Source of the DNA: Hydrolagus affinis
Taxonomy: Eukaryota
Assembly: GCA_012026655.1 (NCBI GenBank)
Contig: JAAILG010001781.1
Span: 1-61,942 of the forward strand
Direction: 5' to 3'
Length of the DNA stretch: 61,942 nucleotides
Both the position numbers and the translations under genes were made by a program. Under the pieces are notes generated by a model. That model saw nothing but the letters and a program-made list of their open reading frames with translations, did no database searches and was not told where the DNA came from. Positions 1,031 through 59,907 of the stretch are shown piece after piece (within the stretch, counting starts at the first letter, position 1; each line of letters begins with the position of its first letter).

Positions 1031-1947
1031 TTGTAATCAATGCTGCTGTTCATGCTGACAATATGAAATGTTTACATGGAGACTGCTGGCCTAAAATGTT
1101 TAGCTATAATTTTACGCGACAGTTAACACATATTTGGACAACACAGTTTACATCGATATCTTGCCTTTCACGTTGGAAAGACGTCTGAAAGCGCTTGACA
1201 CTATCTGTTGGGCACCCGAGCTGGAGACGGAAACCCAAATACCATATAAGACTCAAATACAGAGCTGGCTGTGAACACTCAGCAGGTCAGGCACAGCGAT
1301 GGAGAAAGGAAAGCGGGGAATGTTTATGGTCCATGTCCCTTCCTCAGAACCCTTTGTGATGAATGGCCAGGGACCTGAAAATTTGACTCACTTTTCCAAG
1401 AGATTGAATTAATAATGAGTATTATATATAATATGGAGTATTTGGCAAGAAAACTACATGAATTGAACACTCATTGTAGATCAAATTAAAATATATTCCA
1501 ATAACAATCAGCTAGCAGCAATTAATTGCAGGATATTTGCAAATTTGCGGACTCCTGTAGATTAGTGGATAGAACAAATGCCTCACAAGCGAGACAACCC
1601 CAGGTATCCCCAGGTAGAGGAAAACGTTCAGCAAGTTTCCTGAATCCACACGCCGCGGTTTACCCAGCAGTAATTGGGAACCCAGGGGCTAGTGCATTCG
1701 CGGACTGCTTTTACTGTATTAATGATATCATAAAAAGAATAATAAATTTTTTGAAAAACTATTAATTTGGTCGCGGAATCCACGGCTGTTTATAGCACTC
1801 TGCTGGGCGAAATTTGCTCCCACGATTTGAATACAACATATACAGTCAAATCACTTCACACTATATTCTGTGAAGCATCTACAGACGACTCGGAGACATG
1901 CAATGGCGCTATTTCAAATCCAAGGCTTATTATTGTTATTAAATTAC

Positions 1948-2265
1948 CTGAGTTGGATTTGGAAACTGTGAATCTGGAGACCCCTGGAATCCAGAGGCTG
2001 TTGAGAGACACAGAACAGGAAAAAAACAACCCCATGTTATACAGGCAGCGTCTCTTCCAAATACCGCAGCTCAAAACCCTGTAAAGACCTTTTGAATTCC
2101 TTTCTTCACTGGAATTAATCCCAGTTTTAACTTCATTGCCATCTTTACTCCAGGTGAGCGTTGTATCTTCAGGGTAAAACACAGCCGTTTCACACACAAG
2201 AGTCAGAGAATTTGAAGAATCTCTTTCAGAATCTCTGCGGAATATTTTCAGCGGGGTCGGGGGGA
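1948..2265 (-). pseudogene. R0 orphan C1 exon (open, 318 nt, splice sites intact); no V or leader found upstream
   Basis: cccccag|TC...TCAG|GTAATT; LVCETAVFYPEDTTLTWSKDG. The flanks are homologous to receptor introns. Confidence 0.75.
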
Positions 2266-6445: not shown

Positions 6446-6959
6446 ATGTTGCGCATTATTTTGTTGATTCTATCTTAAGATAGTGCATACCAACTGATTT
6501 TTCACGAATGTTGCAGAGCCAGAGTCACCAGTGGAGATGGATTCATGCAATTTTTGTGTTTCTTTGAAAGGCTGATTGAATATGTTCCACAAAATTTAAG
6601 TTGGTAACTCTTAAATCTAGGTTTCAATTTCGTAACATATAAAGGGCATTTCAACCCCCTTTGTGAGGTATGCGACTAACTAGTTACCTTTCAAAATGTT
6701 ATCCAAGTAACCCAACCAAAGCTTTTTCGCAAACAAGTCTGGTTATACAGATATAATCAGCAATATTCTCCAAGAATTTTCCCAAAGACTTTTAATGTAA
6801 CAAAGTAATAAATGCAGTTATGTTTGAAACTGGTACAAAGAGCATTGCATCACTAGACTGATGCGGCACATCTTTCGGTAAATTGAAAAACTACATTGAA
6901 TATACACCAATATCAGTTACTGTGCCGTTTGCTTTATTTGGATCTTGGTTCCATGGAGA

Positions 6960-7109
6960 TAGCTGCTACTCCTCCTCCTCAGTGGTTTCTCACATGGATC
7001 TCTCACACTCTGTATTCTTAACAGTACTTTTAGGTTTTCATGTTTTATTGGAGGAATCTAAATCCAGAACAGTATATGTCAGATTGTTCCCAGCTGTTCT
7101 TTGATTGGT
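6960..7109 (-). pseudogene. R1 decayed third tyrosine-motif exon (LTYTVL kept, then TGA, Y>C and a 1-nt deletion)
   Basis: Aligns to the R3 terminal exon 27022-27195. GGA>TGA at 7038-7040; TATGCAAAG became TGTGAGAG. Confidence 0.75.
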
Positions 7110-7558
7110 CTGAAAAGGCAATGTTTGACAATTTGATTATATTAATTCGGTTTCCTCAGAAATTCGTACAATGCATTTCAAAAACTCTCCTCAAATATTT
7201 GCCGATTATTATTTGAAGCATGACTTGCTCCATAGCTCATTTGATAAAGGCACTGCTCCTCACAGAACTGAGCTAAACGGAACCCATTAGGCACAATTCC
7301 ATTCTATATTGGATTAGTTACACATCAGCAGCTAAAATGGGCTGGAAAAGTAAAGCAAAAATCAACCAGGGTAGCAGATGTTCCAATGATTTGGAATGAT
7401 TTTTGTTTTGCTAATTGCCACAGTCATTTGGTCACCCAGGTCAGAGACAGAGAGAGGAAAGATCAGAGGAGAAAGAAAGATTAACAACAGAAATATACAA
7501 ACTAGTTGACAATAAACAATGAAGTGTGACACACTATATATAATGTAGCAAGTAATAT

Positions 7559-7681
7559 TCAGATGTATAACTGGGAGTATATAACCTGATTGTCTTCTTT
7601 TTTAGGTCTTGGAGTTGTTTTGCAATGATTCAAATCCATTTGGGCATAAGTCACCGACTCAGTCCCTGCTCCCTGTAGCGT
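7559..7681 (-). CDS. R1 second tyrosine-motif exon, probably terminal (VTYAQM; VIYSQL ITIM; TGA)
   Basis: ttttacag|ACG, open for 40 codons to TGA at 7559-7561. The paralogous donor CAG|GTA is CAGTTA here. Confidence 0.78.
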   Translation of the reverse strand, partial: TLQGAGTESVTYAQMDLNHCKTTPRPKKEDNQVIYSQLYI

Positions 7682-8232
7682 CTGTAAAATAGAATGCGAC
7701 TCAGTATTGCCATCACTAGTCTGCAGATTCCTGGATAGGTGTTGATCAAAATGCTCCCAAAAATAGATAGTTCCACCTAAGTTTCAGCATATGTTTAGCA
7801 TATAGATTCCAAATCTTTTAGCAGTGAAATTAAACGTGTGGCAATTATTAATTGATCTACAGAAATATGAAGTGTACATTTCCATATACGGTTGATATCA
7901 AAGTGCCTCATAGATTGACACAAATAATAAGTAGTCTTACATAAAAATACTATTTTGGCTTTATAGTGGCAGATTGTCATCAACATATCATAGCCCAGGA
8001 CAGTGCCAGAGAGTGAAGATTAGAGGACCAAGAAAGGTTAACCACAAAAATGTACAAATTGCCTTACAGAAAAAATTTAATTGAGTCCCAATGATCACTG
8101 AAGTGATACAATTCATTTGGATACAAATTCTGTTCTAAATTTGCGTTGAGTCCAGCACATTGGGATGTCCTCCCGATGTGAAAGGCGCTATATAAGTGCA
8201 AATTTGTTGTTGTTGTTGTTGCTCAAATATAC

Positions 8233-8343
8233 CTGGGCATAAACAGTCCCCTCCTCTTGCCTTTTCGGTTTCAAAGTTTTCTTGGAACTGGTTAAATTCA
8301 ATGTGACATAAGTCACCCCCTCATTCTTTGCTCCGTGCTTTCC
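8233..8343 (-). CDS. R1 first tyrosine-motif exon (VTYVTL ITIM; TVYAQ)
   Basis: ttttacag|GGA...CAG|GTATAT, 111 nt, phase 0-0, open frame GKHGAKNEGVTYVTLNLTSSKKTLKPKRQEEGTVYAQ. Confidence 0.8.
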
Positions 8344-10532: not shown

Positions 10533-10670
10533 TCATAGAATCATAGAATCTTACGGCACAAAAGGAGGACATTCGGCCCATCGAGTCTGTGCCAGCTCTT
10601 TAAAAAGAGCAGTTCAATCCCACTCCCCGGCTCTCTCCCCATAACCGTGCAAACCCGTCCTCTCCAAATA
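10533..10670 (-). mobile_element. CR1 3' tail
   Basis: tcatagaatcatagaatc end plus ggaggacattcggcccatcgag; related tails near 39005 and 56700. Confidence 0.75.
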
Positions 10671-10682
10671 AATATATCTTAC

Positions 10683-10796
10683 CTTTAATTTTGTGTAATT
10701 GGCACTGTTTGCCAATAATGATCAAAAGCAGCAAGAGTACCAGACCTCCAACTACACATCCAGCAATCAGTCCATAGTGAGGCTGAGGGCCATTCT
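10683..10796 (-). CDS. R1 exon 4, uncharged transmembrane exon
   Basis: cctgtag|AG...AAAG|GTAAGA, 114 nt, phase 1-1. Encodes ENGPQPHYGLIAGCVVGGLVLLLLLIIIGKQCQLHKIK. Confidence 0.88.
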
Positions 10797-11357
10797 CTAC
10801 AGGAACAGCATGAACTGAATATGTTAGTGTCTCCAACAATCAATTATACTTTCTTTACCTGCATCACATCAGAAATGTTTAAGCAGAATTTTTTTTAAAA
10901 GGAGACAATTGAATAGAGTAAGAGAGGAAAGAGTAAATTCAAAGAAAGTCAAACTAAGATGAATGTTATCGGCAACTCCTACACCCTCCCTCCCCTCCCC
11001 GCCTCGCCTGTCCTCAGCTCGGGTCTGAAGCAGTGAAAATCCAGCGCCTTGGGATGTCCTCCTGACGTGAAAAGCGCTACACAAGTGTAATTTTGCTGTT
11101 ATTGCTGTTGTACAAACATTTCAATCCAGTATTCGGGTAGAAAATTACATGACTATAGAATTATATCATTACAATTTTCTGTGTAAACAAACGTAAATGT
11201 ATTTTAGTAAAAAGTTAGTTTTTAACCACAACAATTGTAGTTAGGAAATTACACTGGTTGGAATTAGAAACGGTCATTTAATAAATTTAACTACCATTTC
11301 ATGTAATGAGGTGTTTAAGAGACAATGAAAGGCAGCAAGACATGTTAGGCATCCTAC

Positions 11358-11678
11358 CATCCAACCCTGTGTTGGGATTAGAAACGGTGTAACTGGCAAC
11401 CAGTGGATTCGGGTGGCAGACATGAGATGCCAGACAGGTATAAACAACCCCGCTCTCTGGAGGCTGAGTCTCTTCCATAGAGCTGGAGACTTCGTAAAGT
11501 CCATTTGAATTCTTTTCTTTAGTGACATTAATCCCAGTTCTAACTTCATTCCCATCTTTAAACCACGTGAGCGTTATATCCCCCGGGAAAAACGCAGCCG
11601 TTTCACACACAAGAGTCTGAGGCTTTGATGAATCACTTTCAGGATCTCTGGGGATTATCTTCAGCGGGGTCGGGGACA
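11358..11678 (-). CDS. R1 exon 3, C1-set Ig domain
   Basis: Acceptor ccctacag|TG, donor GATG|GTAGGA, 321 nt, phase 1-1. Contains LVCETAAFFPGDITLTWFKDG, NSNGLYEVSSSM and YTCLASH. Confidence 0.92.
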
Positions 11679-12427
11679 CTGTAGGGCAGAGAATGGAGCA
11701 GAATCGTGTCACTTGTGATCAGTTGGAATATAAACATTATTCTAATTTGAATTGTATAATAACTGTTTCCTTGGAAAATTATAACAACGAATCTGGTTTG
11801 TAATGGAAAGAATGTGATTTTTGCGGTTTTAAGAATGTTAAACCGAGTGTTGCAGTTTTAAGGCTGGCTTTGTTTGCAATGATGTGCGCAGTTTAGGAGA
11901 TTTAGTCGCCTGTTTGGTGGTGTGGGTGGGGGGGGGGGGGGGTAGAAGGTACACAATAGAGTACACAATCTTAACATTGAGGATTTCAGAAATGACGTGA
12001 AAACCTTCCCTTGACCTGGAATAATTCGGTTGTGAAATCAACACGAGGCCGGAGATGCAGAATTCAGTGAAAGATTTGAAAGGGAAACCGATCATAGCTG
12101 TAAAGAGTTTGGGGAGACGTGAAGAAATTGGAGTAAAAGCTCTGCCACCTTTCTGTAGCAGAAAAACCTTTAGTTTGGGACCATAAAGTTCCCGAATTCA
12201 TTCCCGAAATCCATCCTCCTCCCCCTTCCGTCTCTACAGTCAATCCCAGCTGAACACACACCTCTCTGAGTGTCTTTTCAGCCACTCTCCCATCCCAGCT
12301 GGATTATAGCTCCGGCTGCCATGCATTCTTTGCCAAGCGCTTCAAGCTGCTCTCCCAACAGTGACTTGTATTAATGTAAATTCAAGTAAATATACAGTGA
12401 AGATCTCAGCCAAATCATGTCACTTAC

Positions 12428-12733
12428 CACAAACAGTTAATTGCGACCCAGTTCCATTAACCGCTCTATTACCCGGAATGACCAGGCTACAGTAATAGAT
12501 CCCAGAGACCTGGATGTCTGCAGCCAGGAGATTGAAGAAGGCGTTTCTTGAACCATTGAAACCAAATTCTTTCGTTTGATCCTCTCTGAGGAATCCATTC
12601 TCTCCCAGCTTCCACCAGTGAGCTCTCACACTCCTGGTGACAGGGAAGCCACAGGAGAACGTCGCCTTCTCACCTCTGTTGACAATGATATGATCCGGTT
12701 GTTGTGTCACTGTGAACACTGTACAGTCAGCAA
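12428..12733 (-). CDS. R1 exon 2, V-set Ig domain with germline J-like G strand
   Basis: Acceptor ctgacag|TT, donor TGTG|GTAAGT, 306 nt, phase 1-1. Contains FSC...HWWK...SGIYYC and NGTGSQLTV. Confidence 0.93.
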
Positions 12734-12763
12734 CTGTCAGAAATAAATTCAAACATTGTTTTA

Positions 12764-12863
12764 NNNNNNNNNNNNNNNNNNNNNNNNNNNNNNNNNNNNN
12801 NNNNNNNNNNNNNNNNNNNNNNNNNNNNNNNNNNNNNNNNNNNNNNNNNNNNNNNNNNNNNNN
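12764..12863. other. 100-N assembly gap in R1 intron 1
   Basis: Run of 100 N. Confidence 0.99.
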
Positions 12864-12917
12864 AGAAATGATCCACACTGTGAGAGACAGACACTGAAAC
12901 ACAACACTCGCCAACAT
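12864..12917 (-). CDS. R1 exon 1, signal peptide (MLASVVFQCLSLTVWIIS...); last 4 nt and the donor lie in the N gap
   Basis: ATG at 12917; the visible 54 nt match the R4 leader exon (52041-52098), which ends AAAG|GTTTGT. Confidence 0.85.
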
Positions 12918-13008
12918 CCTGATCTGTGACTGAGACTAACCCTAAAGCTGTGGCTGGTCTGTGACCAGGGGTTGGAGTTGATTGAGATGAGATGTGAGAG
13001 TGATGTTT

Positions 13009-13017
13009 GACTTCCTG
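13009..13017 (-). promoter_or_regulatory. ETS-type motif CAGGAAGTC upstream of R1
   Basis: About 90 nt 5' of the ATG; the same motif sits upstream of each leader. Confidence 0.5.
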
Positions 13018-13249
13018 ACCCTGTGGGCGCAGCTCGCGCTCTGTTTTAAGAAAAATGTTTCCAGACTTTCACCTTATGTGAGATACACTATATCAGTGAG
13101 ACCCTATGAGAAGACAATTCGCCATTTGCTCACAAGACTGGAGAGCCAACCTTGTCTATTAGTTGTTGAGAACTCGTTTCTCTAGCACTTGGGATCATTA
13201 TCGTTGCTTTTCTCTCCTTCCTCCTGAACTGGCTTCAGGGAATCTCCTA

Positions 13250-13655
13250 AATTACTGTGACCAAAACTCTCCCCATCCCACTAGTCCTTGTCAGACTCCA
13301 CTGGCTCCCTGTCACAAAACGGATCGACTTCAAGATTCTTACACTCATCTGCAAAACACTGCCAGCCCTCCTCCTTCCTGATGTAGTCAACCGATCTTTC
13401 ATCCACTCCTCCCTGAAACTAAGCAAAGCTCTCACTCATTCCCTCCTCCCCGCCTCTCCTTCCCTCATTCATATGATGAAGGAAAATGTTCCTTTTGGTG
13501 GGTGCTTAGAGTCAAAGACCTTTCTCTTCGACCGCGCCTTTGGTCACCTTTCTACCCCTGCCCTGGCTCGGTCCCGGGATCCGCTGATGTGAAGCGCTCT
13601 GAGACGCCGCCCGGCGTGGAGGGCGCTGTATAAATCGAAGTTGTTGTTGTTGTTG
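13250..13655 (+). mobile_element. L2 3' fragment
   Basis: RLHWLPVTKRIDFKILTL followed by the tail. Confidence 0.75.
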
Positions 13656-15612
13656 TCGCCTCTCCCTCACCCCCGTCACAGGGCGACAGGCACAGCCACT
13701 GCTGAGCTCTCGGAGAGGCTAAACAGTGCGAATGATGCTGTAGATATATTGTTGGTTCATTCCATAACAGTTTGAGCAAATGCTTCATTTTAATCTTAAA
13801 ATTAATTGTAAAGAGCATCTTTAATTTAGGCGAATGGCCATTCATATAAATTTGTATAAAACATTTGTAACTAGAAGAGCAGCCATTAAATAGTTCTCGG
13901 GAAATTAAACTTGATTCAAAGGCGTGTAATGTAACATGTGCCCGTGTCCACCACATGGGGCTGGACCATCAATGATGACTAAGTTACCAGCTTGAACTTC
14001 ACTGAACACTTTATTTTCGACAATTCAATATACGAAATCAAAGCTGTTATGTTTAGTTATGGTGTGCGATACAAAGATCTTTATTCTATGTGAGTGACCA
14101 CAACAAATATCATGTGAAAATACATAATAAAAACCTTATTTTCCTTCACAGCCGACCGCAGTCGTCACCCACGCAAAACAACTGCGATTCAATTCAAACA
14201 CAATTGAAATGGAATTTGTCACACACACTGAGTGCGACAAAACAGACACATGATGCAGTTTTTAAAACGATGGAAACTGTGTGTGTTTTGGCTGACCCTG
14301 TGGCGTGATGGAAAATGAATACAGATCGAAGACTAGACGCCTTTCGGATGCTTTTGTGCAGAGGGTTCTGTGGATACTGATCCATAGATTTACTGAACAA
14401 TCCACATCATTGTCGGCAGCAGTCAGACATAGCAAAACATATTTAATGATCTATAATCGATGTACAACTGGACTCAGGTAATGTCCTGAAACTGTTTTAA
14501 ATGTTTGTACTGGTTCCGTTCGCTGCATTATATTATGTTAGTAATTGTCGGCTTATTGGAGCCAAATTGACCAAGATGATGTAAAGTAGTTTGACCTGAG
14601 TCGAGGGAGAATGTCTGTGAAACTGGCAATATTTACCGGGTAGTAAACAAATAAGCGGTGGGTGATATTCTAGATATATTCCGACTCCCAAACGGTATAA
14701 ATCAGATGCCCTCAACTATATATGATATAGTGTAACAGTCTAGAATTTCTTAATCCGCTGGTTCCCCCAGTCAGTGCATCATTCCGTCGCTTCTGATCGT
14801 TTCTTCCTCACTTCATCTATAATTAAATAAGAAATGCAATTGTGAACATTAACAATCCTTTGATTCTATGATTAATTGTAACCAATGCTGCCGTTCGTGC
14901 TAACAAATGATATTTCACTATGAAAACATCGAGACTGTCAGCGTAAAATCTTTCAGCTATAATTTTAAACGACAATCAACCATATTCGGACAACACAGTT
15001 TTCATCGATATCGTGTCTTTCGCATTGGAAGGACGTCTGAAAGCGCTTGACACTATCGGTTGGGCAGCCGAGCTGGAGATGGAAACCAAAGTCTCAAACA
15101 ACTCAAACACAGAGCTGGCCTTAACTCTCAGCAGGTCAGGCACAGCGATGGAGAAAGGAAAGTGGGGAATGTTTATGGTCCATGTCCCTTCCTCAGAACC
15201 CTTTGTTATGAATGGCCAGGGACCTGAAAAATGGACTCACTTTCCGAGAGTTTGAATTAAGCAAAATGTTATCTGATATATAGTTCTATGGAGTATTCAG
15301 CAAGCAAACTGTACGACTGTTTATGGGACTCTGTTGGGGGAAACTTGCTCCCGCGAATGGACCACAACATATACAGTCACTGCTTCAGACGACTCGGAGA
15401 CATGCGATAGCGCTTTATCAAATGCAAGGATTATTATCATTAAATCACCTGCGTTGGAATTAGAAACGGTATTTAAATAAATGCAAATAGTCTCCAGTAA
15501 TAAGGTGTTTAACAAACAACGAAAGGCAGTAAAACAAGTTGGCGTCCTGCCATTCAAGACGAGCGACAAAGATGTATCAATGCAAGGATTATTATTATTA
15601 TTATTAAATTAC

Positions 15613-15908
15613 CTGAGTTGGATTTGGAAACTGTGAATCTGGAGACCGCTGGAATCCAGAGGCTGGTGAGAGACACAGAACAGGAAAAAAACAACCCCGC
15701 ATTACACAGGCAGCTTCTCTTCCAAATACCGCAGCTCAAAACCCTGTAACGACCTTTTGAATCCCTTTCTTCACTGGAATTAATCCCAGTTTTAATTTCA
15801 TTGCCATCTTTACTCCAGGTGAGCGTTATATCTTCAGAGTAAAACGCAGCCGTTTCACACACAAGAGTCAGAGAATCTCTGCGGAATATTTTCAGCGGGG
15901 TCGGGGGA
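15613..15908 (-). pseudogene. R2 orphan C1 pseudo-exon (1-nt deletion at the start, 21-nt internal deletion)
   Basis: Near copy of R0, 296 nt; has 5 G where R0 has 6 G just after the acceptor. Confidence 0.78.
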
Positions 15909-16344
15909 CTGGGGGACAGAGAATGGGCCAGAATCACGTTAATTGTTACCAACCACAACAACAAACTTACATCTAAGGAGCATCTCTCACGTCGGGAGGA
16001 CGTGGATCAGTTGGAATCTAAAACTTTATTCTAATTTGAATTCTACATTAACTGTTTCCTTGGAAGATTAGAGCAAGGAATCTACATTGTAACGGCAGGA
16101 AAGTGATATTTGTGCCCCTGGTGACAGTCACACGCTCGGGGACTTTAGATACTTTGATCGAAGAATCGTAAGCAAGTGCCAGAAACTAAAGTCAAACTAA
16201 AGTCATACATTAGAATAATGCGCCATGGAGTAAACAGTCGAGTAAAAGAGAAACAAACATGAGCGTGTGTATATAATATTTGGTACATGGAAACAAGCTT
16301 CCACATATTTCATAGAAGAACTAAATGAGAGAATAAACATATAA

Positions 16345-26750: not shown

Positions 26751-27021
26751 AACAAGGCAATGTAATTACAATAGTTATATTTAAGAAAGTTAGCAGATGG
26801 GTACAAACATTTTTTCACAATTAAGTATGGTTATATAGGTACGGTGAGCAATAACTTCCAATAATTTTCCTGAACACATATTATTTAAAAATCTAATAAA
26901 TGCAGTTATGTTTGAAATGGGTGGAAAGAGCAATGCAGCACAAGACTAACATGGCACATCATTTGGTAAACTTAAAAACTACATCTAATATACACCACTA
27001 TCAATTTCTGTGCCTGTTACA

Positions 27022-27195
27022 TTATTTGGATCTTGGTTCCCTGGAGATAGCAGCTGCTCCTTCTCTATAATTTCTCACATGGATCTTTGCATACTCTGTA
27101 TTCTTAACAGTACTTTTAGGTTTTCCTGGTTTTTTGGAGGGATGTAAATCCAGAACAGTATACATCACATTGTTCCCAGCTGTTCTTTGATTGGT
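27022..27195 (-). CDS. R3 terminal exon with ITIM VMYTVL and ITSM-like TEYAKI
   Basis: ttttcag|ACC, 57 codons then a stop; lies inside ORF 27022..27207. Confidence 0.82.
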   Translation of the reverse strand, partial: TNQRTAGNNVMYTVLDLHPSKKPGKPKSTVKNTEYAKIHVRNYREGAAAISREPRSK

Positions 27196-27652
27196 CTGAA
27201 AAGGCAAAGTTTGACAATTTCATCAATTTATTTTACTTCAGTTTTCAAAAATCTACTTTGATATTTGTCAATTATTATCTGCAGCATGGCATGCCCCATA
27301 CATCCTTTGATAAAGACACTGCTCCTCACAGAACTCAGCTAAACAGAATCTACTAGCCACAATTCCGTTCCATATTGGATTAGTTGCGCATCAACAGCAA
27401 ACTTGCGCTGGGAGAGAAAAGTGAAAATCCACCAGGTAAGCAATTGTTCAAATAATCTGGACTAGAAGTGTTTTTGTTTTGCTAAAGAATGGTGGATTGC
27501 CACAGTCATTTCATAGCCCAGGTCAGAGTCAGACGGAGAAAGGATCAGAGGAGAAAGGAATATTAACCACATAAATATACAAACTAGATTATGATAAACA
27601 TTGAAGTGAGATCCACTATATAAAATGTAGCAGGTACTATTCCGAGACATAC

Positions 27653-27760
27653 CTGGGCATATACAACCGTCTCATCTTGTTTTTTAGGTGTTGGAGTTTT
27701 TTTGCGATTCAAATCCATTTTGGCGTAAGTCACCAACTCATTCCCTGCTCCCTGCAGTGT
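27653..27760 (-). CDS. R3 second tyrosine-motif exon (VTYAKM; VVYAQ)
   Basis: ttttacag|ACA...CAG|GTATGT, 108 nt, phase 0-0, open. Confidence 0.78.
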
Positions 27761-28189
27761 CTGTAAAACAGAATGTGGTACAGTGTTGCCATCACTGGTC
27801 TGGAGATTCCTTGATAAGCATTGATCAAAATGCTATCAAGAATCAGTTTAAAATATTCAACATATAGCTTCCAGATATTGTATCAGTGAGAATCATCCAG
27901 TGTAGCAGCTGTTCGATGATCTACCGAAATATGTGATGTGCATTTCTATATATGGGTGATGTCCCAGTGCCTCATAGATTGACAGACACAATAACTAGTC
28001 TTATACAAAAAAACTATGTAAGTATACAGTGGCAGATTGTCAGCAGCATGTAACAGCACAAGATTAACCACAAAAATGTACAAACCATCTTACAGTAAAT
28101 ACTGAATTGAGTTCCATGCTTTACTGAAACAAAATAAATAAATTTGATAGAAAAGTTTTCTGTTTTCATTTTGTGTTTCTCAGATATAC

Positions 28190-30420: not shown

Positions 30421-30522
30421 CTTTCCGTTGGTATAATTGCCATTGTTTCCCAATAATGATCAAAAGCAACAGTAATATCAGCCCTTCAACTACACATCCA
30501 GCGATCAGTTGACGGCCAATCA
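30421..30522 (-). CDS. R3 exon 4, TM exon (VIGRQLIAGCVVEGLILLLLLIIIGKQWQLYQRK)
   Basis: cttgtag|TG...AAAG|GTAAGA, 102 nt, in frame; paralog of the R1 TM exon with a 12-nt deletion and G>E. Confidence 0.82.
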
Positions 30523-31003
30523 CTACAAGAACAGCATAAACTGAACGTGTTAGTGACTCCAGCAATGAGGTACACTTTCATTTTGGAGGTTACCAAACAA
30601 TGAAAATTTAACATCCAATTTGAAGCAAGTATTTATCATATAATAACAACAAAACAGGACATACCACGTTAAAATATGTACATTTGATGCCTTCAGTTCT
30701 GATTGAGCAGAGTCTCAGTATTGGAATATTGTTAAAGACAATTTAAGAGACGAAAGAGTAAATTCAAAGAGGGACATGTAAAGTTGAATGTTATTGCACC
30801 AATATTTCAATGCAGTATTTTGCTAGAAAATGATATGATTATAATTGTCTGTGTAAGTACATGTAACTAAACTTTGGATAACAATTTAGTTTTCATCAAT
30901 TGTGTTTGGGAACATAACAGCATATAAATAAATTTAAATATAATTTCCAGCAATGAGGTGTTTAACAAACAATGAAAGGCAGCAAGAGAAGTAGGCATCC
31001 TAC

Positions 31004-31324
31004 CATCCAACCCTGTATTGGGTTCAGAAACGGTGTAACTGGCAACCTCTGGATTCCGAAGGCTGACATGAGATGCCAGACAGGTATAAACAACCCCGAT
31101 CTCTGGAGGCTGTATCACTTCCATAGAGCTGGAAACTTCGTGAAGCCCATTGGAATTCTTGTCGTTCTTGAAATGAATCCCAGTTTTAACTTCATTGGCA
31201 TCTTTAAACCACGTGAGCATTATATCCCCTGGGAAAATTGCAGCCGGTTTACACACAAGAGTCTGAGAATTCGCTGAATCTCTTTCAGAATCTCTGCGGA
31301 CTATCTTCAGCGGCCTCGGGGGGA
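31004..31324 (-). CDS. R3 exon 3, C1-set domain
   Basis: ccgacag|TC...GATG|GTAGGA, 321 nt, open; both Cys and the Trp are present. Confidence 0.9.
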
Positions 31325-32239
31325 CTGTCGGACAGAGAGTGGAGCAGAATCTTATACTTGTCATCAGTTGGAATATAAAACTTTATTCTAATTTGAATTG
31401 TATAATAACTATTTCCTTGGCACATTATAAAATGGAATCTGGATTCTAAAGGCGCGAATGTGATTTCGCAGCTTTGAAAGTGTTGTTGCATTTGTTGGGA
31501 AACATGTGTTCAGTTTAGGAGATATATGTACAGTCGCCTTCGAGGGGCTAAAGAAGACAGGGGTACATAATCTTAACATTGTGGCTCACATGATGTTAAA
31601 CCGTTCTTATTACATTGAATATTGTGAAGTTGTGAAATCCAATCCCACGACTGGCCTTAGATGCAGAATTAAGGGGAATATACAAAAGGGAGACAGAACA
31701 TATTTGTAAACAATTTGGAGAGAGGTGAAGAAACTGGAAAAAGCTCTGCCACCATTCCAGGGCGACTACAACCCGCATTTATATAGTGCCCTTCACGTGA
31801 GATGGTAACGTTAGATCCAGATTTAAATAGAGATTTCACCATCAATAGAGAAATAAGCCAAATGTCCCCATTCACACCAACATTAATTTTCTTCCACTGC
31901 ATTTCTCTACATTTGAAAAGATTTCAACTGATTTACAAAAGATAAAACAGATTTCTTCGAAACCATTTTGTGGCTGTTTGTGGGACATTGTTGTGTGTGA
32001 AATGTTCAAGTTTTGTAAAGTGTTAATTTTTATCTTTCGTATTAACAATAATTATCCTTGTTTTTGATATAGTATCTTAGACATTGTTAAGGTATCTCAA
32101 CTCGTAGCACATAATATACTATGAACAGGATTGATTGTGTACTTGTGGGCAAAATTCAGAGAAAATATGTAAATCAGTCATTTATCATTGCCTGGACAAT
32201 ATGTGAAAGATATTCTGATGAGTATTCATCGCCACAATA

Positions 32240-32590
32240 TTAATGCTTATCTTCGAGGTATTCACAGTGAGAGAACCGCCTCAAAGCATTTAATTGGATT
32301 CACTGTAAAGTATGGTGAGTTTGCATTTCTGTATGAGATCAGAAACACAGCAGCCAGTGTTCCACACAGCAATGTACCACCAAACAGTCATGAAGTGAAT
32401 GAGAAAATTTAACTCATTAGCCAGAACACACCGAGGAAGAATTTCTCTTTTGCTTTTGATTAGTACCGCGGGATCTGTAATATTCACCTAAACAAGCAAA
32501 GGGGACCCGAGGTTAACGTCTCCCCCAGTGTGGAAGCCACAGAGCGCTCCTCAGCATCGCAGTGAATAGGGAGCAATCCGAGATAATCGG
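32240..32590 (-). mobile_element. Degenerate Deu-domain SINE; paralog at about 58330-58690, others near 21200, 47330, 53150 and 60650
   Basis: The reverse strand gagacgttaacctcgggtcccc...cattgctgtgtggaacactggctgc resembles the DeuSINE core as I recall it; not database-checked. Confidence 0.55.
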
Positions 32591-33144
32591 AATAAATGCC
32601 ATCAGGATACAATAAAATATCAGATCGATTAATAATAAAAAGAGGAATCCTTGTATTTGATATAGCACTGATCACCTCTCTATAAATATAGATTTACTCT
32701 ATATATGTGGGTTAAATCCAGCAGGCAATTTCACACAACAGTGTAAACAAACAGTCGTGGATTGAAATGACCGATTTATTGTTGTTTTTATTCGCCGAAT
32801 TATTAACTAGGCGTGTGGAGTAAGGAAACTTGGCCAAAGTTTTGCGCTGCCTGGAGCTGAACCCTGGACACTCGCTTCTAAGGCGAATGCTCTAGCCACT
32901 GAGCTACAGGACTCCAGCCTATAGTTCCAGTCACGGTGGTATGAAGGGACAGACATGTTTGAAAACCTTGTATAACGCAATGATGGAGCAACTCATCTTC
33001 CCGCTGTGTTCCGTTTCATAAATTTGCCGGCTCAAATCAGCGCAATAACAGAGGGCAAAACTTAATAATTTACTCATATTGATTCCAAAATGCAACACCG
33101 CATCACATTTGAACATTTTATGGTTCTAATATATTAACACTTAC

Positions 33145-33450
33145 CTTGTACAATTAACTCTGATCCAGCTCCATTTCCTGCTACTTTCCCCTTACGGAAC
33201 ACTGCACAGACATAGACTCCTGAGTCGTGCAAAGTCACACTTAGCAGCTGGAATGTATTGGAATCGAATACTTTCCTGTGAGAGGGTATTTTATGTAAGT
33301 ATTCACCCTCATCTTGTTTCCACCATTGAAATGTCAAAGCTGAACTTTGTTGATCATTCCCAATCTCGCAGGCGAATTGAACGTTTTCACCTTGCAATAC
33401 TGTCTGTTCTGGAGGATGTTGAATCACACTCACCGACGCATCAGCAGCAA
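33145..33450 (-). CDS. R3 exon 2, VJ-type V domain
   Basis: ctgacag|TT...CAAG|GTAAGT, 306 nt. Contains FAC...QWWK...DSGVYVC and NGAGSELIV. Confidence 0.92.
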
Positions 33451-33643
33451 CTGTCAGGAAATAAATTAATCTATAATTACTGATTATCGAGAGGAAAAAG
33501 CGCGACAAAGTAATCGGAGAGAGCGAGACAAAGGTGGGAGAAAGTTAGCAGGAAAGAAAGACGGAAGTATTCACTGTACACATCTTGAAACTCCTTATCT
33601 ATATTGTTTTGTATTGAAACTGTGCTGTAGTAAAATGACACAC

Positions 33644-33689
33644 CTGTGGCTATTAGAGAAAGATAGAGGATCACATCACTGGCCATCAT
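33644..33689 (-). CDS. R3 exon 1, signal peptide (MMASDVILYLSLIAT)
   Basis: ATG at 33689, donor ACAG|GTGTGT, 46 nt, phase 1; paralogous to the R5 leader. Confidence 0.75.
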
Positions 33690-33759
33690 TGTGAGCAGTT
33701 GTTGAGCCTCACACTACACCAGTTACTGTAGCAAACGTTTGCTGATGGTTTAATATGAA

Positions 33760-33790
33760 AGATTTTGCAATGTGGTTTGACTTCCTGTTT
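33760..33790 (-). promoter_or_regulatory. R3 proximal promoter: ETS (33779-33787), RUNX TGTGGTT (33771-33777), C/EBP-like TTTTGCAAT
   Basis: Motifs read directly from the sequence; position conserved with R5. Confidence 0.5.
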
Positions 33791-36700
33791 CCGTGATTCA
33801 GAGACGGGTTGGATGCGATTGGCAAAGAAAGTTGTGCAACTGTAGAAAATTTAATCACTCCTCAGATCGGCAGGAAAGAAGAGGGTGAAATATTACTATT
33901 GACCGTCTTTTTTCCTCATATTGCAGTAGTTCTTATGTTTCATGGAAAACATTCACGTTTATAATAACAACAACAAAATTACACTTGGAACACGCCTTTC
34001 GTGTTAGGAGGAGTAGCTATTTGATAATAACGCTGACACACTGTGCTAAGGAAACGACGTTCTATTCAGTGCAATAATAATAATACTACAGACAGACCCC
34101 GCTTAACATCGCAGTGTTGTTCTTGCTTAGCGCGATTCGAAACTCAACCATGTTAAGCGAATACATTTTTCTCATAAGAAGGAATGTAAAAACTGGAGTA
34201 AGATTCTTTGGGATATTTTTCATCAAAATTTTACTCGCTCCCTTCCCGGCTCAATCATTCGCTGGCTGACTGCCTGAGCGGCTCACTCACTGGCTGCCGC
34301 CTGGCTCTCTCTCTCGCTGGCGGCCTGGCTCACTCCCAGGTCCTAGTGAAATCTGACAAATTTCGTGAAAGGACAAGGAGTGCGTGGAATGATCTTTAAT
34401 GCAAACTCAAAAATTGGATTAATTTAAAGTTATGAGTAAATGTACAACATTTCATCTGGAAGCTGTGCAGTTCACCATTGAATGCTTGACCATATTGATA
34501 GTCTTCCAATATTTTAAGCATTCTGAGACGCCGTCCGGCATGCAGGGCATGTTGTTGTTATTTTATTTCATGAAATTCAAGATCATGAATACAAATTTGA
34601 TGATTTCAGGAACAATATATGTTCCTTTGTGTTCAGCATATTCAGTGACCTGGGACGTCCTCCCTACGTGAAAGGCCATCTAAAAATGTAATTTTGTTGT
34701 TGTGTTCTAACGAAGGGACATAGACCCGAAATGTTGATTCACTTTCCTTTCTCCATGATGATTTGTGGGACGCTGCTGTGCCATGTTTCGTCCACAAATA
34801 TACAGTCAATTCAATTTACAGTATATTCCGTGAAACGCTTTGAGACGTATAGACGATGCGACAAGCGCTATATCAAAGTGCAAAGATTATTATTATTATT
34901 CTTAGTTGAATCAGTGGAGAGGTAATTGTTTGACATATATTGCAGGGAGTTGATGCCACTGAAAAGTCCAGCATTGTCCATGCACAAATGGTATTCTGCA
35001 TTCAATGATAACTTGTGACTCCCCCAGCCAGTTTATTAAACGTGAGCAGCCCACAGCACTGATGATTCTATCTTTGCTCGTAGCATTCAAAGTAAGAATA
35101 ATAATAATAATGCCTGCATTTGAAATAGCGCTTTACACATCTTATCGACATCTCAAAACGCTTCACAGAATACCTTATACTGTAAAGAGAATTGACTGTA
35201 TATTTGTGAGCGAAACGCGGCAGCCAATCGCCAAACATTCGTGGATTGAAATTACCAATTTTATGATTGGGGTTTTTTTTGACGGATTATTATTATTAGT
35301 TGTGTGGAGTAAGGAAACTTGCCCAAGGTTTCGCCCTGACCTGCCTGGATTCGAACACAGGTCTCACGCTTGTAAGGCGAGCGCTGAGCTCCTCAGTTTT
35401 ATTGAAATGTTTCGGTTTCGATTCAGCGCGTGGATAATATTACTCGTGTCTGGCATCCTTGTAGATTATTTCAAAAAGAATCCTCTGTGTAGCGGTAAGT
35501 CATTAATTGATTTGGGATGCTGCCGACCTGAATTTTAAAATCGTGGCTGAGTGTAGAATAACTGACCTAAAGTGAGCTGTTGAAACATATTGAGGCTGTG
35601 CGTTAGAAAGTGAAAATGAAGAAATTGTACTGGCAAGTTGAAGCAATCACTGCTGTGTGGTGGATCGCACCCAAAATATCCAGAAGCAATTTCTTTATTT
35701 TGTAAAGAATAATATGAATATTTTGTTGTTGAAAATCTGACATTTTCACGTATATTCGAGACCCCCCAATCTTTAAATATCAGATCACTATTTGATTAGT
35801 ATGACTTTGAACACATTATAATAGCGGTGTCAGATGAAGCGTCAACCCTAATGATAATTGATATTTTTCTTCAATGTTCTGATCAATTATTGACTGTGAT
35901 TGTCATTTCTTTCCTTTCTGATTGCTGAGTTCCCAATCAATCTGATTTGACAATCATCTGACAAAATGTTCTCATAACGTTTTGCAAAATAGCTTTTTCT
36001 TTCCATAAACTGTTGGATTCTAATATAATCTACATAAGGATCAAATGGTGCCGAAAACGTGATTAATGCGGAAACTCCAAATGTAGCGGAATTCACAGGT
36101 TTGCGTCCGCGCTGATGGAGGAAGTGGAAGTGGGAAGCGGGAAGCGGGTTAGGGGCGAAAGATAACGGAAGGCAGCTTGACATCGCAATTTTGTATGAAA
36201 TGCAAGAATCCACGAAATCAAAAGGCTAATTATGCAACAATACAGTTTTGATAAATATATCTGTTATTATAGGAACAAAATATGAGACATCAATGATAAC
36301 AGGAACATTGAAGAACTTGAAGAGAATCTCCAGTATACGTCCAACTGCAGTAAATAAATATAAATAATGTTACACACGAATACTAATTGTAGATTCCTTG
36401 TGCCTATAAATTACCAAATGATGCAAAATAACTGCGGCTCGAATTCAATATATTATACTGTATTTGCAGATTTTAGAACATAGGACAGGCTTTGCATAAC
36501 TGTAAGCGTTTCCAATATTAACATGAACTTTGTATTTTAATTATTTTAAGTAATAGGTTGAGAACATTTCACTCAAACTCGAGCGGTTAATATGTCTGCG
36601 TATAACTTGGATTTCGATGAAACTCAGTGGGAGTTGTCCACCCCGAGTTTGTGACGGGCTGTAGGAGATTGTACCTGCAGCCATCAGCAGCCACACAGAG

Positions 36701-49708: not shown

Positions 49709-49827
49709 TTACCTTTCAAGTTGTGAGATTTTAACATGGTCAACAATGAAGATGGTCAACACTATCACTACCAAGAAACAGAATATAAACCGTAAAATCG
49801 TCTCGTTCTCCGACATTCCACAACAAC
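49709..49827 (-). CDS. R4 exon 4, TM exon with Arg and a short tail (GCCGMSENETILRFIFCFLVVIVLTIFIVDHVKISQLER*)
   Basis: Acceptor ttttctag|GT is in phase with the C1 donor. The hydrophobic stretch is preceded by Arg. AG|GTAAG reads either as a donor or as AGG TAA. Too short for the ORF track. Confidence 0.75.
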
Positions 49828-50670
49828 CTAGAAAATAAATATCGAAGCGTAAACTGTTTATACGAAATCTGCTGGATAATTAGGATATATTGGGGAAATG
49901 CACACGTTTTTAATTAATTTCCATTGGAAGCTACAATGCAGTGGACGAATAATATAAACTGCGCATTCAATTGATTAAAAACAACGACAAATTGGTGTGA
50001 GAAACCAATGCACAGTTTATTCGTGACATATATTATGCTGTAGCGGATGCCGCGTGACTATGTGCTCAGCTTCAAATGTACCAGAGAAAATGACTATTTC
50101 CACTCGAGCCATGGAGAGGTGGCCACCATTGTAATCCAAACTGATTCAATTGGACATCTACTATTATCCTAAAAAGTCTATGAAACATCTTACAATCTAA
50201 TTTATCTCACTGCAGTAATTGTTCTCATAAAGCAAAAGGCACCGAAAGATGTTATCCAAAATTGAATGAATCGATGAACGAATAGTATTTGTGTTTCATT
50301 TGTGAACATGTATCTGTCCAAGAGTACAACTCCTGATTTCAAACCTAACTGCAGGTGAAGCACGCGGGACTCTTTCATTTTACAACAGGACGAAACACGC
50401 TACTAACATTTTAAAGGAAATATTTAACGTTTAATAACTAGACTATTCCTTCACCATTTCCTCAGTATTCTGCAAGAAAACTATGTACGTACTTCTAATT
50501 TTATTTGGAAATAGATTAAATATATTGCGTATAACACTTTAGTTAACAACAGTTGTGTTTAGCAAATTACTTGCGTTGGAATTAGAAACAGTAAATAAAC
50601 AAATGTAAATACAATTTCCAGTAAGAAGGTGCTCAACAAATAACAAAATAAAGACAAATAGGCATCCTAC

Positions 50671-50991
50671 CATCCAATCCTGTGTTGTGATTAGAAACGG
50701 TGTAACTGGCAACCAGTGGATTGGAAAGGCAGACATGAGATGCCAGACAGGTATAAACAACCCCGATCTCTGGAGGCTGAGTCTCTTCCATAGAGCTGGA
50801 AACTTCGTAAAGTCCATTTGAATTCTTTTCTTTCGTGACATTGATCCCAGTTCTAACTTCATTCCCATCTATAAACCACACGAGCGTTATATCCCCCGGG
50901 AAAAACGCAGCAGTTTTACACACAAGAGTCTGAGGCTTTGATGAATCTCTTTCAGGATCTCTGGGGATTATCTTCAGCGGGGTCGGGGACA
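50671..50991 (-). CDS. R4 exon 3, C1-set domain
   Basis: ccctacag|TG...GATG|GTAGGA, 321 nt, open. Confidence 0.9.
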
Positions 50992-51576
50992 CTGTAGGGC
51001 AGAGAATGGAGCAGAATCGTGTCACTTGTGATCAGTTGGAATGTAAACATTATTCTAATTTGAATTGTATAATAACTATTTCCTTGGAGGGTTTAGAAAG
51101 TTAAGGTACATAATTTTAACATTGCGATTTTCAGAAATGACGCGGAAATCTTCCCATCACATGGAATAATTTTGTTGTGAAATCCAGTCCACAGTGGCTT
51201 CAGATGCAGAATTAAGTGGAATATTTAACAGGGAGGCAGACCATAGCTGTAAAGAGTTTGGGGAGAGGTGAAGACATTGGAGTGAAAGCTCTGCCACCTT
51301 TCTGTAACAGAAAAACCTTGAGTTTGGGAGCATAAAGTTCCCGAATTCATTCCCGAAATCCATCCTCCTCCCCCTTCCGTCTCTACAGTCAATCCCAGCT
51401 GAACACACACCTCTCTGAGTGTCTTTTCAGCCACTCTCCCATCCCAGCTGGATTATAGCTCCGGCTGCCATGCATTCTTTGCCAAGCGCTTCAAGCTGCT
51501 CTCCCAACAGTGACTTGTATTAATGTAAATTCAAGTAAATATACAGTGAAGATCTCAGCCAAATCATGTCACTTAC

Positions 51577-51882
51577 CACAAACAGTTAATTGCGACCCAG
51601 TTCCATTAACCGCTCTATTACCCGGAATGACCAGGCTACAGTAATAGATCCCAGAGACCTGGATGTCTGCAGCCAGGAGATTGAAGAAGGCGCTTCTTGA
51701 ACCATTGACACCAAATTGTTTCGTTTGATCCTCTCTGAGGAATCCATTCTCTCCCAGCTTCCACCAGTGAACTCTCACACTCCTGGTGACAGGGAAGCCA
51801 CAGGAGAACGTCGCCTTCTCACCTCTGTTGACAATGATATGATCCGGTTGCTGTGTCACTGTGAACACTGTACAGTCAGCAG
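51577..51882 (-). CDS. R4 exon 2, VJ-type V domain
   Basis: ctgacag|CT...TGTG|GTAAGT, 306 nt; 6 nt differences from the R1 V exon. Confidence 0.93.
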
Positions 51883-52040: not shown

Positions 52041-52098
52041 CTTTAGAAATGATCCACACTGTGAGAGACAGACACTGAAACACAACACTCGCCAACAT
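52041..52098 (-). CDS. R4 exon 1, signal peptide (MLASVVFQCLSLTVWIISK)
   Basis: ATG at 52098, donor AAAG|GTTTGT, 58 nt, phase 1. Confidence 0.85.
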
Positions 52099-59588: not shown

Positions 59589-59781
59589 CTGTTAAGAAAT
59601 GAATTAACCTATAATTAGTGATTATCGAGAGGACGAAGCGCAATAAACTAAATAGAGAGAGGGAGAGAAAAGTGGGAGGAAGTTAGAGGGAAAGAACGAC
59701 GGACGAATTCACTGTACACATCTTGAAGCTCCTTATCTATATTGTTTTGTATAGAAACTGTGCTGTAGTAAAATGACAGAC

Positions 59782-59836: not shown

Positions 59837-59907
59837 TGTGAGCAGTTGTTGACGCTCACACTGAACCAGTCACTGTAATAAACTGTTACTGATAGTTTAA
59901 TATGAAA

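What the first reader, a model, noticed from the sequence alone, without database searches (positions are those of the whole stretch)
12182..12733. R1/R4 ectodomain homogenisation: identical intron beside a V exon with mostly replacement changes
Seen: 12182-12427 is identical to 51331-51576 (246 nt of intron). The adjoining V exons differ at 6 of 306 nt, and 5 of these change residues (V/A, A/V, E/Q, F/V, N/S), 4 of them between the C and E strands. The leader and promoter are also nearly identical. Inference: recent gene conversion or duplication between inhibitory and activating genes with diversifying selection on V, as in pathogen-driven paired receptors. The counts are small.
Basis: partly seen in the sequence, partly recalled or inferred. 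Interest (0 to 1): 0.7.

Follow-up and report, generated by a model that had tools for sequence, protein, structure and literature searches.

The report
Gene conversion between paired receptor genes
Two immune-receptor genes 39 kb apart in a cartilaginous fish, one built to inhibit and one to activate, have had their outer halves copied onto each other, as is known for such pairs; the claimed diversifying selection is not supported.

Summary
R1 (V exon 12428-12733) and R4 (51577-51882) share a perfect run of 362 nt (12182-12543): the 246 nt of intron plus the last 116 nt of the V exon. The V exons differ at 6 of 306 nt, 5 of them replacements. Another 147 nt, covering the leader and the 5' flank, are identical.

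The identity is a mosaic. A block of about 2 kb (11358-13318: C1 exon, intron, V exon, leader, promoter) differs by 0-5%. It lies inside homologous flanks that differ by 19-26%, about as much as R1 or R4 differs from a third paralogue, R3. A run of 362 nt is never reached by chance (0 of 20,000 permutations).

This fits gene conversion limited to the ectodomain of an old inhibitory/activating pair. R1 has an uncharged membrane span and ITIM-type tail exons. R4 has an arginine in its membrane span and a short tail. The pattern is the known "merohomogenization" of paired receptors, here in a SIRP-like V-C1 family.

Diversifying selection is not supported: dN/dS is 1.49 (Fisher p = 1.0). Silent and intronic sites in the same 220 nt differ just as much.

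Collapse of the two copies at the N gap could not be tested. The scan has noted other SIRP-like pairs elsewhere in this genome.

The parts
12182..12543 (-). Perfect R1/R4 identity run of 362 nt: 246 nt of the C1-V intron next to the V exon, plus the 3' 116 nt of the V exon (strands F and G with the J-like motif). The R4 counterpart is 51331-51692.
12428..12733 (-). R1 V exon (306 nt, phase 1-1), a V-set domain with the J-like motif NGTGSQLTV. It has 6 differences from the R4 V exon, all in 12544-12733.
12544..12763 (-). Segment of 220 nt with 7 differences (5 replacement, 1 silent, 1 intronic), flanked on both sides by stretches with none. Read as skipped by the latest conversion tract(s).
12764..12863 (.). 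Assembly gap of 100 N in the leader-V intron. It also covers the last 4 nt of the R1 leader exon and its donor site. Not filled.
12864..13010 (-). Visible part of the R1 leader exon (ATG at 12917-12915) plus 93 nt of 5' flank. 0 differences in 147 nt against R4 52045-52191.
13011..13318 (-). Upstream (promoter) part of the high-identity block: 17 differences in 307 nt, 11 of them within 13011-13100. Beyond 13318 identity falls to about 64-80%, with an insertion in R1.
11961..12181 (-). Middle of the C1-V intron. 11961-12100 is 21% diverged (the old level) and 12101-12181 is 7%. This is the graded left edge of the identical tract.
11776..11960 (-). Intron stretch present in R1 (and partly in R3 and Ra) but absent from R4. 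It includes a poly-G run of about 25 nt.
11358..11678 (-). R1 C1-set exon (Pfam C1-set, 55 bits). 16 differences in 321 nt from R4 (50671-50991): 9 replacement and 7 silent, dN/dS 0.38.
11228..11357 (-). Intron 3' of the C1 exon. Homologous to R4 50546-50670 but 26% diverged, with R1-R3 at 22% and R4-R3 at 25%. This is the 3' edge of the homogenised block.
10683..10796 (-). R1 transmembrane exon with an uncharged span (LIAGCVVGGLVLLLLLIII). It has no counterpart at R4.
7065..8316 (-). R1 cytoplasmic exons with ITIM-type motifs: VTYVTL (8316-8299), TVYAQV (8247-8230), VTYAQM (about 7654-7637), VIYSQL (7585-7568) and LTYTVL (7082-7065). 6723-7986 is homologous to the R3 tail (26811-28049) at 78%.
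51577..51882 (-). R4 V exon.
50671..50991 (-). R4 C1-set exon.
52041..52098 (-). R4 leader exon (MLASVVFQCLSLTVWIISK, phase 1).
49709..49827 (-). R4 transmembrane exon. It is in frame with the C1 exon and has an Arg early in the span (TILRFIFCFLVVIVLTIFIV). The tail DHVKISQLER runs into a TAA that overlaps the possible donor site. It is unique in the window.

Best explanation
R1 and R4 are an old pair of paralogues in a tandem cluster of non-rearranging V(J)-C1 receptors on the minus strand. The family is SIRP-like and the genome is a cartilaginous fish, chimaera-like by its best protein matches. R1 carries inhibitory signalling parts and R4 carries activating-type parts.

Non-reciprocal recombination (gene conversion) between the two loci, 39 kb apart, has repeatedly overwritten the promoter-leader-V-C1 part of one with the other. 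It has left the membrane and tail parts alone.

Shown: a block of about 2 kb at 0-5% divergence nested in homologous flanks at 19-26%. Inside it sit younger tracts with no difference at all (362 nt and at least 147 nt).

Inferred:
- Several events of different ages, or one event with patchy repair, produced the mosaic.
- The 220 nt that hold all seven differences escaped the latest event(s).
- The functional result is that both receptors keep seeing the same ligand with opposite signals.
For: Sequence identity:
- The perfect 362-nt run and the 147-nt run.
- Divergence by segment: 26%, 5%, 2%, 16%, 0%, 3.2%, 0%, 12%, 2.8%, 19%.
- No permutation reaches the 362-nt run (0 of 20,000).
- Inside the block 77 of 1,675 sites differ, outside it 77 of 357 (Fisher 4e-22).

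Age of the split:
- In the flank 11228-11357 the three genes are equidistant: identity R1-R4 0.74, R1-R3 0.78, R4-R3 0.75.
- In the intron stretch 11961-12100, R1-R4 identity is 0.79 against 0.73 and 0.76 to R3. The R1/R4 split is therefore old.

Controls:
- The other pair, R3/R5, is 80-88% identical throughout with no near-identical tract. So the assembly does not merge paralogues as a rule.
- Contigs of other samples differ from both window copies inside the identical intron tract, at 12365, 12368 and a 1-nt deletion at 12223. The rate is about 3-4 differences per 100 nt. The tract is therefore not an ultra-conserved element.

Opposite signalling parts.

Precedent: ectodomain-limited homogenisation of opposing receptor pairs, including 100% identity over an intron plus an exon in human NKG2C/NKG2E (PMC3210942), and Siglec-11/16, CEACAM and CD300A/C.
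Against: The gap of 100 N lies inside the tract. The perfect identity on both of its sides could in part be an artefact of assembly, polishing or gap closing. No run from the assembled individual could be recognised among the served runs.

No R1 and R4 orthologues from a sister species were available. Homogenisation after a species split is therefore inferred from the mosaic alone.

Donors outside the window cannot be excluded. In run X5 the contigs on the V exon are 10-20 times deeper than those on R1-specific intron.

Expression and splicing of R1 and R4 were not seen.
Confidence: 0.75

Rival explanations
1. Assembly artefact. The near-identical repeat broke the assembly, which explains the gap. 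Consensus building, polishing or gap closing then placed the same letters at both loci, so the 0% tracts overstate the true identity.
For: The N gap at 12764-12863 lies within the tract, and both contig ends next to it are 98.8-100% identical to R4. No reads of the assembled individual were available to check.
Against: Six differences 9-80 nt apart were kept in the V exon next to the identical run, so paralogue variants were not smoothed as a rule. R1-specific and R4-specific flanks join the tract directly. The R3/R5 pair was kept apart at 80-88%. Even without the 0% tracts, the nested block at 2-5% inside flanks at 19-26% remains. The gene structure across the gap is coherent, with the leader exon where it is expected.
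Confidence: 0.1
2. Recent partial duplication or exon shuffling, without conversion. The promoter-leader-V-C1 block of one gene was copied once and landed in front of a different membrane exon. Later mutation produced the differences.
For: R1 and R4 share only the 5' half, and their membrane exons are unrelated.
Against: The flanks on both sides of the block are homologous at 74-81% identity, not unrelated as at a duplication junction. A 140-nt stretch at 21% divergence lies inside the block. Divergence within the block ranges from 0% to 5% in steps, which uniform mutation does not give.
Confidence: 0.07
3. Diversifying or divergence-keeping selection on the V domain. The five replacements in strands C, D and E were driven by selection, or protected from conversion, because the activating and inhibitory receptors must differ slightly in what they bind. 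This could hold alongside conversion.
For: Five of six exon differences are replacements. Four lie in strands C, D and E around the DE loop. All differences in the 729-nt near-identical tract fall within 212 nt (P = 0.003). The four replacements inside the aligned domain fall in variable columns of the family alignment; the fifth lies before its first column.
Against: dN/dS is 1.49, with Fisher p = 1.0 and binomial p = 0.585. The silent site 12702 and the intronic site 12755 share in the cluster, so the segment looks older, not faster. Contigs of other samples carry the R4 letter at 12544 and 12733 in various combinations. This suggests shared polymorphism and not fixed differences between the genes.
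Confidence: 0.15
4. Purifying selection on a functional element in the intron, such as an enhancer or an alternative exon, keeps the 246 nt identical.
For: Perfect identity in non-coding DNA right next to an exon.
Against: In other samples the same tract differs from the window at about 3-4 per 100 nt and has an indel. The neighbouring coding sequence is less conserved than the intron. R3 and R5 have no alignable counterpart, with 44-48% identity.
Confidence: 0.03

Closest known systems
Merohomogenization of opposing leukocyte receptor pairs (KLRC/NKG2, Ly49, NKR-P1, PIR; Fossum et al. 2011, PMC3210942)
   Same: An activating and an inhibitory paralogue keep different signalling parts while the exons, and neighbouring introns, of the ligand-binding part are homogenised in patches. 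Human NKG2C and NKG2E are 100% identical over most of an intron plus an exon, as R1 and R4 are over 362 nt.
   Different: Those receptors are C-type lectin or Ig-like receptors of mammals, and homogenisation after speciation was shown with orthologues. Here the family is a V(J)-C1 receptor of a cartilaginous fish, and the orthologue test is missing.
Siglec-11/Siglec-16 and Siglec-5/Siglec-14 paired receptors (PMC5701461, PMC4042635)
   Same: Gene conversion keeps the extracellular part of an inhibitory and an activating gene nearly identical. The activating partner has a basic residue in its membrane span and a short tail (abstracts).
   Different: They are sialic-acid-binding receptors of primates. 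Direction and dates of the conversions are known there but not here.
CEACAM1-related paired receptors, also in Xenopus (PMC2832619, PMC5112662)
   Same: The ligand-binding N domains of ITIM-bearing and activating members co-evolve by gene conversion. This is interpreted as a response to pathogens that use the inhibitory receptor.
   Different: A different IgSF family. The case for selection there rests on many species and genes; here it rests on six differences.
Mammalian SIRP alpha / SIRP beta
   Same: An N-terminal V domain with a J-like strand, followed by C1-set domain(s). There is an ITIM-bearing member and an activating member with a basic residue in the membrane span. Database relatives of this V domain are labelled SIRP-alpha-like or SIRP-beta-1-like. 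The C1 exon matches SIRP alpha and SIRP gamma among solved structures.
   Different: There is one C1 domain here, not two. V identity to any database protein is at most 52%. Orthology to SIRP and binding to CD47 are untested. The best C1 matches among solved structures are immunoglobulin heavy-chain constant domains and shark UrIg2.
Teleost novel immune-type receptors (NITR) (from general knowledge, not tested here)
   Same: Non-rearranging V-J type receptors in clusters, with inhibitory and activating forms.
   Different: NITRs have a V domain, with or without an I-type domain, and no C1-set domain. No sequence comparison was made.

Membership tests
Paired-receptor ectodomain homogenisation by gene conversion (merohomogenization) | Two linked paralogues with opposite signalling modules | tested here: met
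   R1 has an uncharged membrane span and ITIM-type motifs in its tail exons. R4 has an Arg in its membrane span and a tail of 10 residues before a stop. This is shown at sequence level only; signalling was not assayed.
Paired-receptor ectodomain homogenisation by gene conversion (merohomogenization) | High identity confined to the ligand-binding part and nested within homologous but much more diverged flanks | tested here: met
   Divergence is 0-5% in 11358-13318, against 26% (11228-11357) and 19% (13656-13898) in the flanks. Fisher 4e-22.
Paired-receptor ectodomain homogenisation by gene conversion (merohomogenization) | Tracts of identity longer than chance allows, with patchy boundaries | tested here: met
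   The run is 362 nt, against a permutation maximum of 227. A 140-nt stretch at 21% divergence lies inside the block.
Paired-receptor ectodomain homogenisation by gene conversion (merohomogenization) | Paralogues within a species are closer to each other than to their orthologues in a related species (homogenisation after speciation) | tested here: inconclusive
   Contigs of other samples differ from both window copies inside the identical tract (12365, 12368, deletion at 12223). However, organisms are coded, contigs are short, and R1 and R4 orthologues could not be told apart.
SIRP family | N-terminal V-set domain with a J-like G strand | tested here: met
   The motif NGTGSQLTV is present. 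The AlphaFold2 model (pLDDT 92) has a V-type fold that matches IgNAR V, TCR V-alpha and PD-1. The Pfam V-set score is 21.8 bits, below the cut-off of 26.
SIRP family | Two membrane-proximal C1-set domains | tested here: not met
   There is one C1-set exon per gene (Pfam C1-set 55 bits). No second one lies between the C1 exon and the membrane exon.
SIRP family | Orthology to tetrapod SIRP genes, and CD47 as ligand | not testable with these tools
   Only automatic names of relatives are available: 'SIRP alpha-like' and 'SIRP beta-1-like' in Callorhinchus, Scyliorhinus and Heterodontus.

The most novel reading that the evidence does not exclude
The five replacements in strands C, D and E of the V domain are kept apart by selection against a background of continuing conversion. 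The activating R4 would then see a slightly different target from the inhibitory R1, for example a pathogen decoy of the self ligand. That would place the pathogen-driven arms race of paired receptors in a chimaera-like fish, that is, at the base of the jawed vertebrates.
Probability: 0.12. Interest if true: 0.6.

Novelty: new member of a known kind. Interest (0 to 1): 0.3.

Why it matters
It adds a clean example from a cartilaginous fish to a rule known mainly from mammals and, for CEACAMs, from a frog (Xenopus). In opposing immune receptor pairs, gene conversion keeps the ligand-binding half in step while the signalling halves stay apart. If confirmed with orthologues, it would show that this way of evolving is as old as the jawed vertebrates. 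It would also show that it acts on the V(J)-C1 receptor type that resembles antigen-receptor chains. For annotation, it warns that the R1 and R4 ectodomain exons cannot be told apart by short reads. The selection claim, which would have been the more interesting part, has no statistical support at present.

Tried and rejected
- Close relatives of the V exon: a word-indexed protein search found none in the permitted length range. The exhaustive search found at most 52% identity (Callorhinchus), so there was no orthologue close enough to polarise the V differences.
- Reads: the only served runs were Logan contigs of other samples or organisms (coded). None was recognisable as the assembled individual. 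Contigs break at the repeat, so there was no linkage across the 362 nt and no test for collapse. That output also printed loose-end letters running past 12752 and 12762 towards the gap. I made no use of them.
- RNA runs: only single-cell 3' libraries were offered, and the single read-laying run was already spent on DNA-type contigs. Expression and splicing are therefore unverified.
- Callorhinchus locus L001: it holds only one V-C1 gene within 10 kb on either side, so it could not show whether homogenisation recurs there.
- False duplication (a retained second haplotype): rejected. The membrane and tail parts are unrelated and the flanks are only 74-81% identical.
- Faster evolution of one partner: polarising the C1-region differences with R3 and R5 gave 7 derived in R1, 7 derived in R4 and 4 ambiguous, so there is no asymmetry.
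- Donor within the window for the diverged 11961-12100 stretch: R4-R3 identity is only 0.76 and R1-R3 only 0.73, so R3 and its type are not the source.

Full report
**What is in the window**

All the genes discussed lie on the minus strand. A tblastn search with the two Ig exons of the finding shows four V exons and six C1-type exons.

| Gene | V exon | C1 exon |
|---|---|---|
| R1 | 12428-12733 | 11358-11678 |
| R3 | about 33143-33442 | about 31004-31319 |
| R4 | 51577-51882 | 50671-50991 |
| R5 | about 59281-59577 | about 57286-57601 |
| Ra | none | 1946-2260, frameshifted |
| Rb | none | 15611-15904, frameshifted |

- Pfam calls the second domain C1-set at 55 bits. The first domain scores as V-set/Ig just under the cut-off.
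- The V domain ends in a J-like motif, NGTGSQLTV. Its AlphaFold2 model (pLDDT 92) has a V-type fold whose nearest solved folds are IgNAR V, TCR V-alpha and PD-1.
- The nearest database proteins are at most 52% identical. They come from Callorhinchus, Scyliorhinus and Heterodontus and carry automatic names such as 'SIRP alpha-like' and 'SIRP beta-1-like'.
- Among solved structures, the C1 exon matches immunoglobulin heavy-chain constant domains, shark UrIg2, and SIRP alpha and gamma.
- The window is therefore a cluster of non-rearranging V(J)-C1 receptors in a cartilaginous fish. They are SIRP-like but have one C1 domain, not two.
- Earlier notes of this scan describe other inhibitory/activating V-C1 pairs on other pieces of the same genome. 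I did not test those notes.

**The two genes**

- R1 continues into a membrane exon (10683-10796) with an uncharged span. Its tail exons carry the ITIM-type motifs VTYVTL, TVYAQV, VTYAQM, VIYSQL and LTYTVL. The tail is homologous to that of R3 at 78%.
- R4 continues, in frame, into a different exon (49709-49827). Its span has an arginine near the outer end (TILRFIFCFLVVIVLTIFIV). The tail DHVKISQLER runs into a TAA that overlaps the possible donor site. This exon has no other copy in the window.
- The 'inhibitory' and 'activating' labels therefore fit the sequence. Signalling and splicing are inferred, not seen.

**Check of the observation**

- 12182-12427 equals 51331-51576 exactly.
- The perfect run is in fact 362 nt (12182-12543), because the last 116 nt of the V exon are identical too.
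- The V exons differ at 12544, 12560, 12569, 12622, 12702 and 12733. Five of these are replacements (N/S, F/V, E/Q, A/V, V/A) and 12702 is silent.
- A seventh difference lies in the intron at 12755.
- On the far side of the N gap (12764-12863), 147 nt of leader exon and 5' flank are identical. The next 307 nt hold 17 differences.
- On the model, the replacements fall in strand C (A36V), strand D (E54Q and F57V), the start of strand E (N62S) and the N-terminus.

**Is it more than chance, and what kind of event was it?**

Divergence between R1 and R4, segment by segment:

| Segment | Region | Divergence |
|---|---|---|
| 11228-11357 | intron 3' of the C1 exon | 26% |
| 11358-11678 | C1 exon | 5% |
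| 11679-11775 | intron next to the C1 exon | 2% |
| 11776-11960 | absent from R4 | not applicable |
| 11961-12181 | middle of the intron | 16% (21% then 7%) |
| 12182-12543 | V-proximal intron and 3' end of the V exon | 0 of 362 |
| 12544-12763 | 5' part of the V exon and start of the next intron | 7 of 220 |
| 12764-12863 | N gap | not applicable |
| 12864-13010 | leader exon and 5' flank | 0 of 147 |
| 13011-13100 | upstream | 12% |
| 13101-13318 | upstream | 2.8% |
| 13656-13898 | beyond an insertion in R1 | 19% |

- A difference-free run of 362 nt never occurred in 20,000 permutations. The longest was 227 nt, and the analytic estimate is about 1e-8.
- The block 11358-13318 has 77 differences in 1,675 sites. 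The homologous flanks have 77 in 357 (Fisher 4e-22).
- In the flank 11228-11357 the three genes are equidistant: identity R1-R4 0.74, R1-R3 0.78, R4-R3 0.75. In the intron stretch 11961-12100, R1-R4 (0.79) is hardly closer than R1-R3 (0.73) or R4-R3 (0.76).
- The R1/R4 split is therefore about as old as the split from R3. The low-divergence block is a later overlay.
- This is the signature of gene conversion, either several tracts of different ages or patchy repair. It is not the signature of a single recent duplication, whose junctions would lie next to unrelated DNA.
- It is not a retained second haplotype either. The membrane and tail parts of the two genes are unrelated.
- The second pair, R3/R5, is 80-88% identical throughout and serves as an internal control.

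**Constraint on the intron?**

Logan contigs of four public runs from other samples were laid on 10600-12763.

- They differ from the window inside the identical intron tract at 12365 and 12368 and by a 1-nt deletion at 12223. Pieces of 158-169 nt carry 6-7 differences.
- At these places the window's R1 and R4 agree with each other.
- The tract is therefore not an ultra-conserved element. Its identity within this genome is best read as recent copying.
- I do not lean further on these data. Organisms are coded, contigs are short, part of the table was cut, and R1 and R4 orthologues cannot be separated.

**Selection**

- Nei-Gojobori counts for the V exon are S = 70, N = 236, Sd = 1 and Nd = 5. 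This gives dN/dS = 1.49, Fisher p = 1.0 and a one-sided binomial p of 0.585.
- The C1 exon gives dN/dS = 0.38.
- The seven differences within the 729-nt near-identical tract are clustered in 212 nt (P = 0.003). The silent site 12702 and the intronic site 12755 belong to the cluster.
- Roughly neutral sites in that segment differ at about 2 per 100, the same as replacement sites (5 per 236).
- The simplest account is that this 220-nt segment was not covered by the latest conversion(s) and is older, not faster.
- In other samples the R4 letters at 12544 and 12733 appear in different combinations with R1 letters. This hints at shared polymorphism.
- Diversifying or divergence-keeping selection is not excluded, but nothing here supports it.
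- Polarising the C1-region differences with R3 and R5 shows no asymmetry between the partners: 7 derived in R1 and 7 in R4.

**The gap**

- The 100-N gap lies in the leader-V intron of R1. It also hides the last 4 nt of the leader exon and its donor site.
- The gene structure across it is coherent, with the leader where R4 has it.
- A contig break inside the most repeated stretch is what a near-identical repeat would cause. It also leaves room for smoothing of the letters at both contig ends.
- I could not test this, because no run from the assembled individual was recognisable.
- The gap was not filled. The loose-end letters that one search printed past 12752 and 12762 were not used.

**Comparison with what is known**

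- Homogenisation restricted to the ligand-binding part of opposing receptor pairs is well described. Fossum et al. named it merohomogenization for KLRC, Ly49, NKR-P1 and PIR. They report 100% identity of most of an intron plus an exon between human NKG2C and NKG2E (PMC3210942).
- Siglec-11/16, Siglec-5/14, the CEACAM families (including those of Xenopus) and CD300A/C are further cases.
- The present case works like these. The defining features that could be tested are met: opposite signalling parts, a nested high-identity block, and tracts longer than chance.
- The comparison with orthologues is missing.
- As a SIRP family member it fails one feature, since it has one C1 domain and not two. 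Orthology is untested. I therefore call it SIRP-like.

**Verdict**

- Gene conversion is supported, at about 0.75.
- Diversifying selection is unsupported.
- The assembly caveat remains open.
- This is a new member of a known kind, of moderate to low interest unless the selection reading is borne out by population data.

Noticed in passing
window 1946-2260 and 15611-15904 (minus strand): Two more C1-type exons (Ra and Rb), each with a frameshift in the second half and no V exon nearby. They are 92% identical to each other over about 540 nt (1927-2469 against 15592-16113). DNA downstream of them (1064-1394 and 14529-15244) is homologous to DNA downstream of the R4 membrane exon (48520-49247) at 75-81%. 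They may be remains of activating-type genes.
   Followed up: partly
window 30997-33967 against 57279-60102: The second V type (R3 and R5, 32-35% protein identity to the R1/R4 V domain) forms a pair that is only 80-88% identical throughout. It shows no recent homogenisation, unlike R1/R4.
   Followed up: partly
window 30452-30508 (minus strand): The R3 membrane span has a glutamate (LIAGCVVEGLILLLLLIII) where R1 has glycine, although R3 has an ITIM-type tail.
   Followed up: no
window 13296-13660 and 52476-52680: There is a SINE-like element with a (GTT)n tail upstream of R1. R4 shares its start but has deletions, so the element was there before the two loci separated. Its tail end (13515-13656) has an inverted copy at 54668-54810.
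   Followed up: no
window 10600-10672 and 10965-11110: Very high-copy dispersed repeats in the R1 intron. Summed contig depth reaches up to about 600,000 in public runs, against about 40 for single-copy DNA.
   Followed up: no
window 12425-12763, run X5: In one public run the contigs on the V exon are 10-20 times deeper than those on R1-specific intron. More copies of this V exon may exist in that organism, or the library may be enriched.
   Followed up: no
window 49709-49713: The possible donor site of the R4 membrane exon overlaps an in-frame TAA (GAA AGG TAA). The exon can therefore end the protein with or without splicing.
   Followed up: partly
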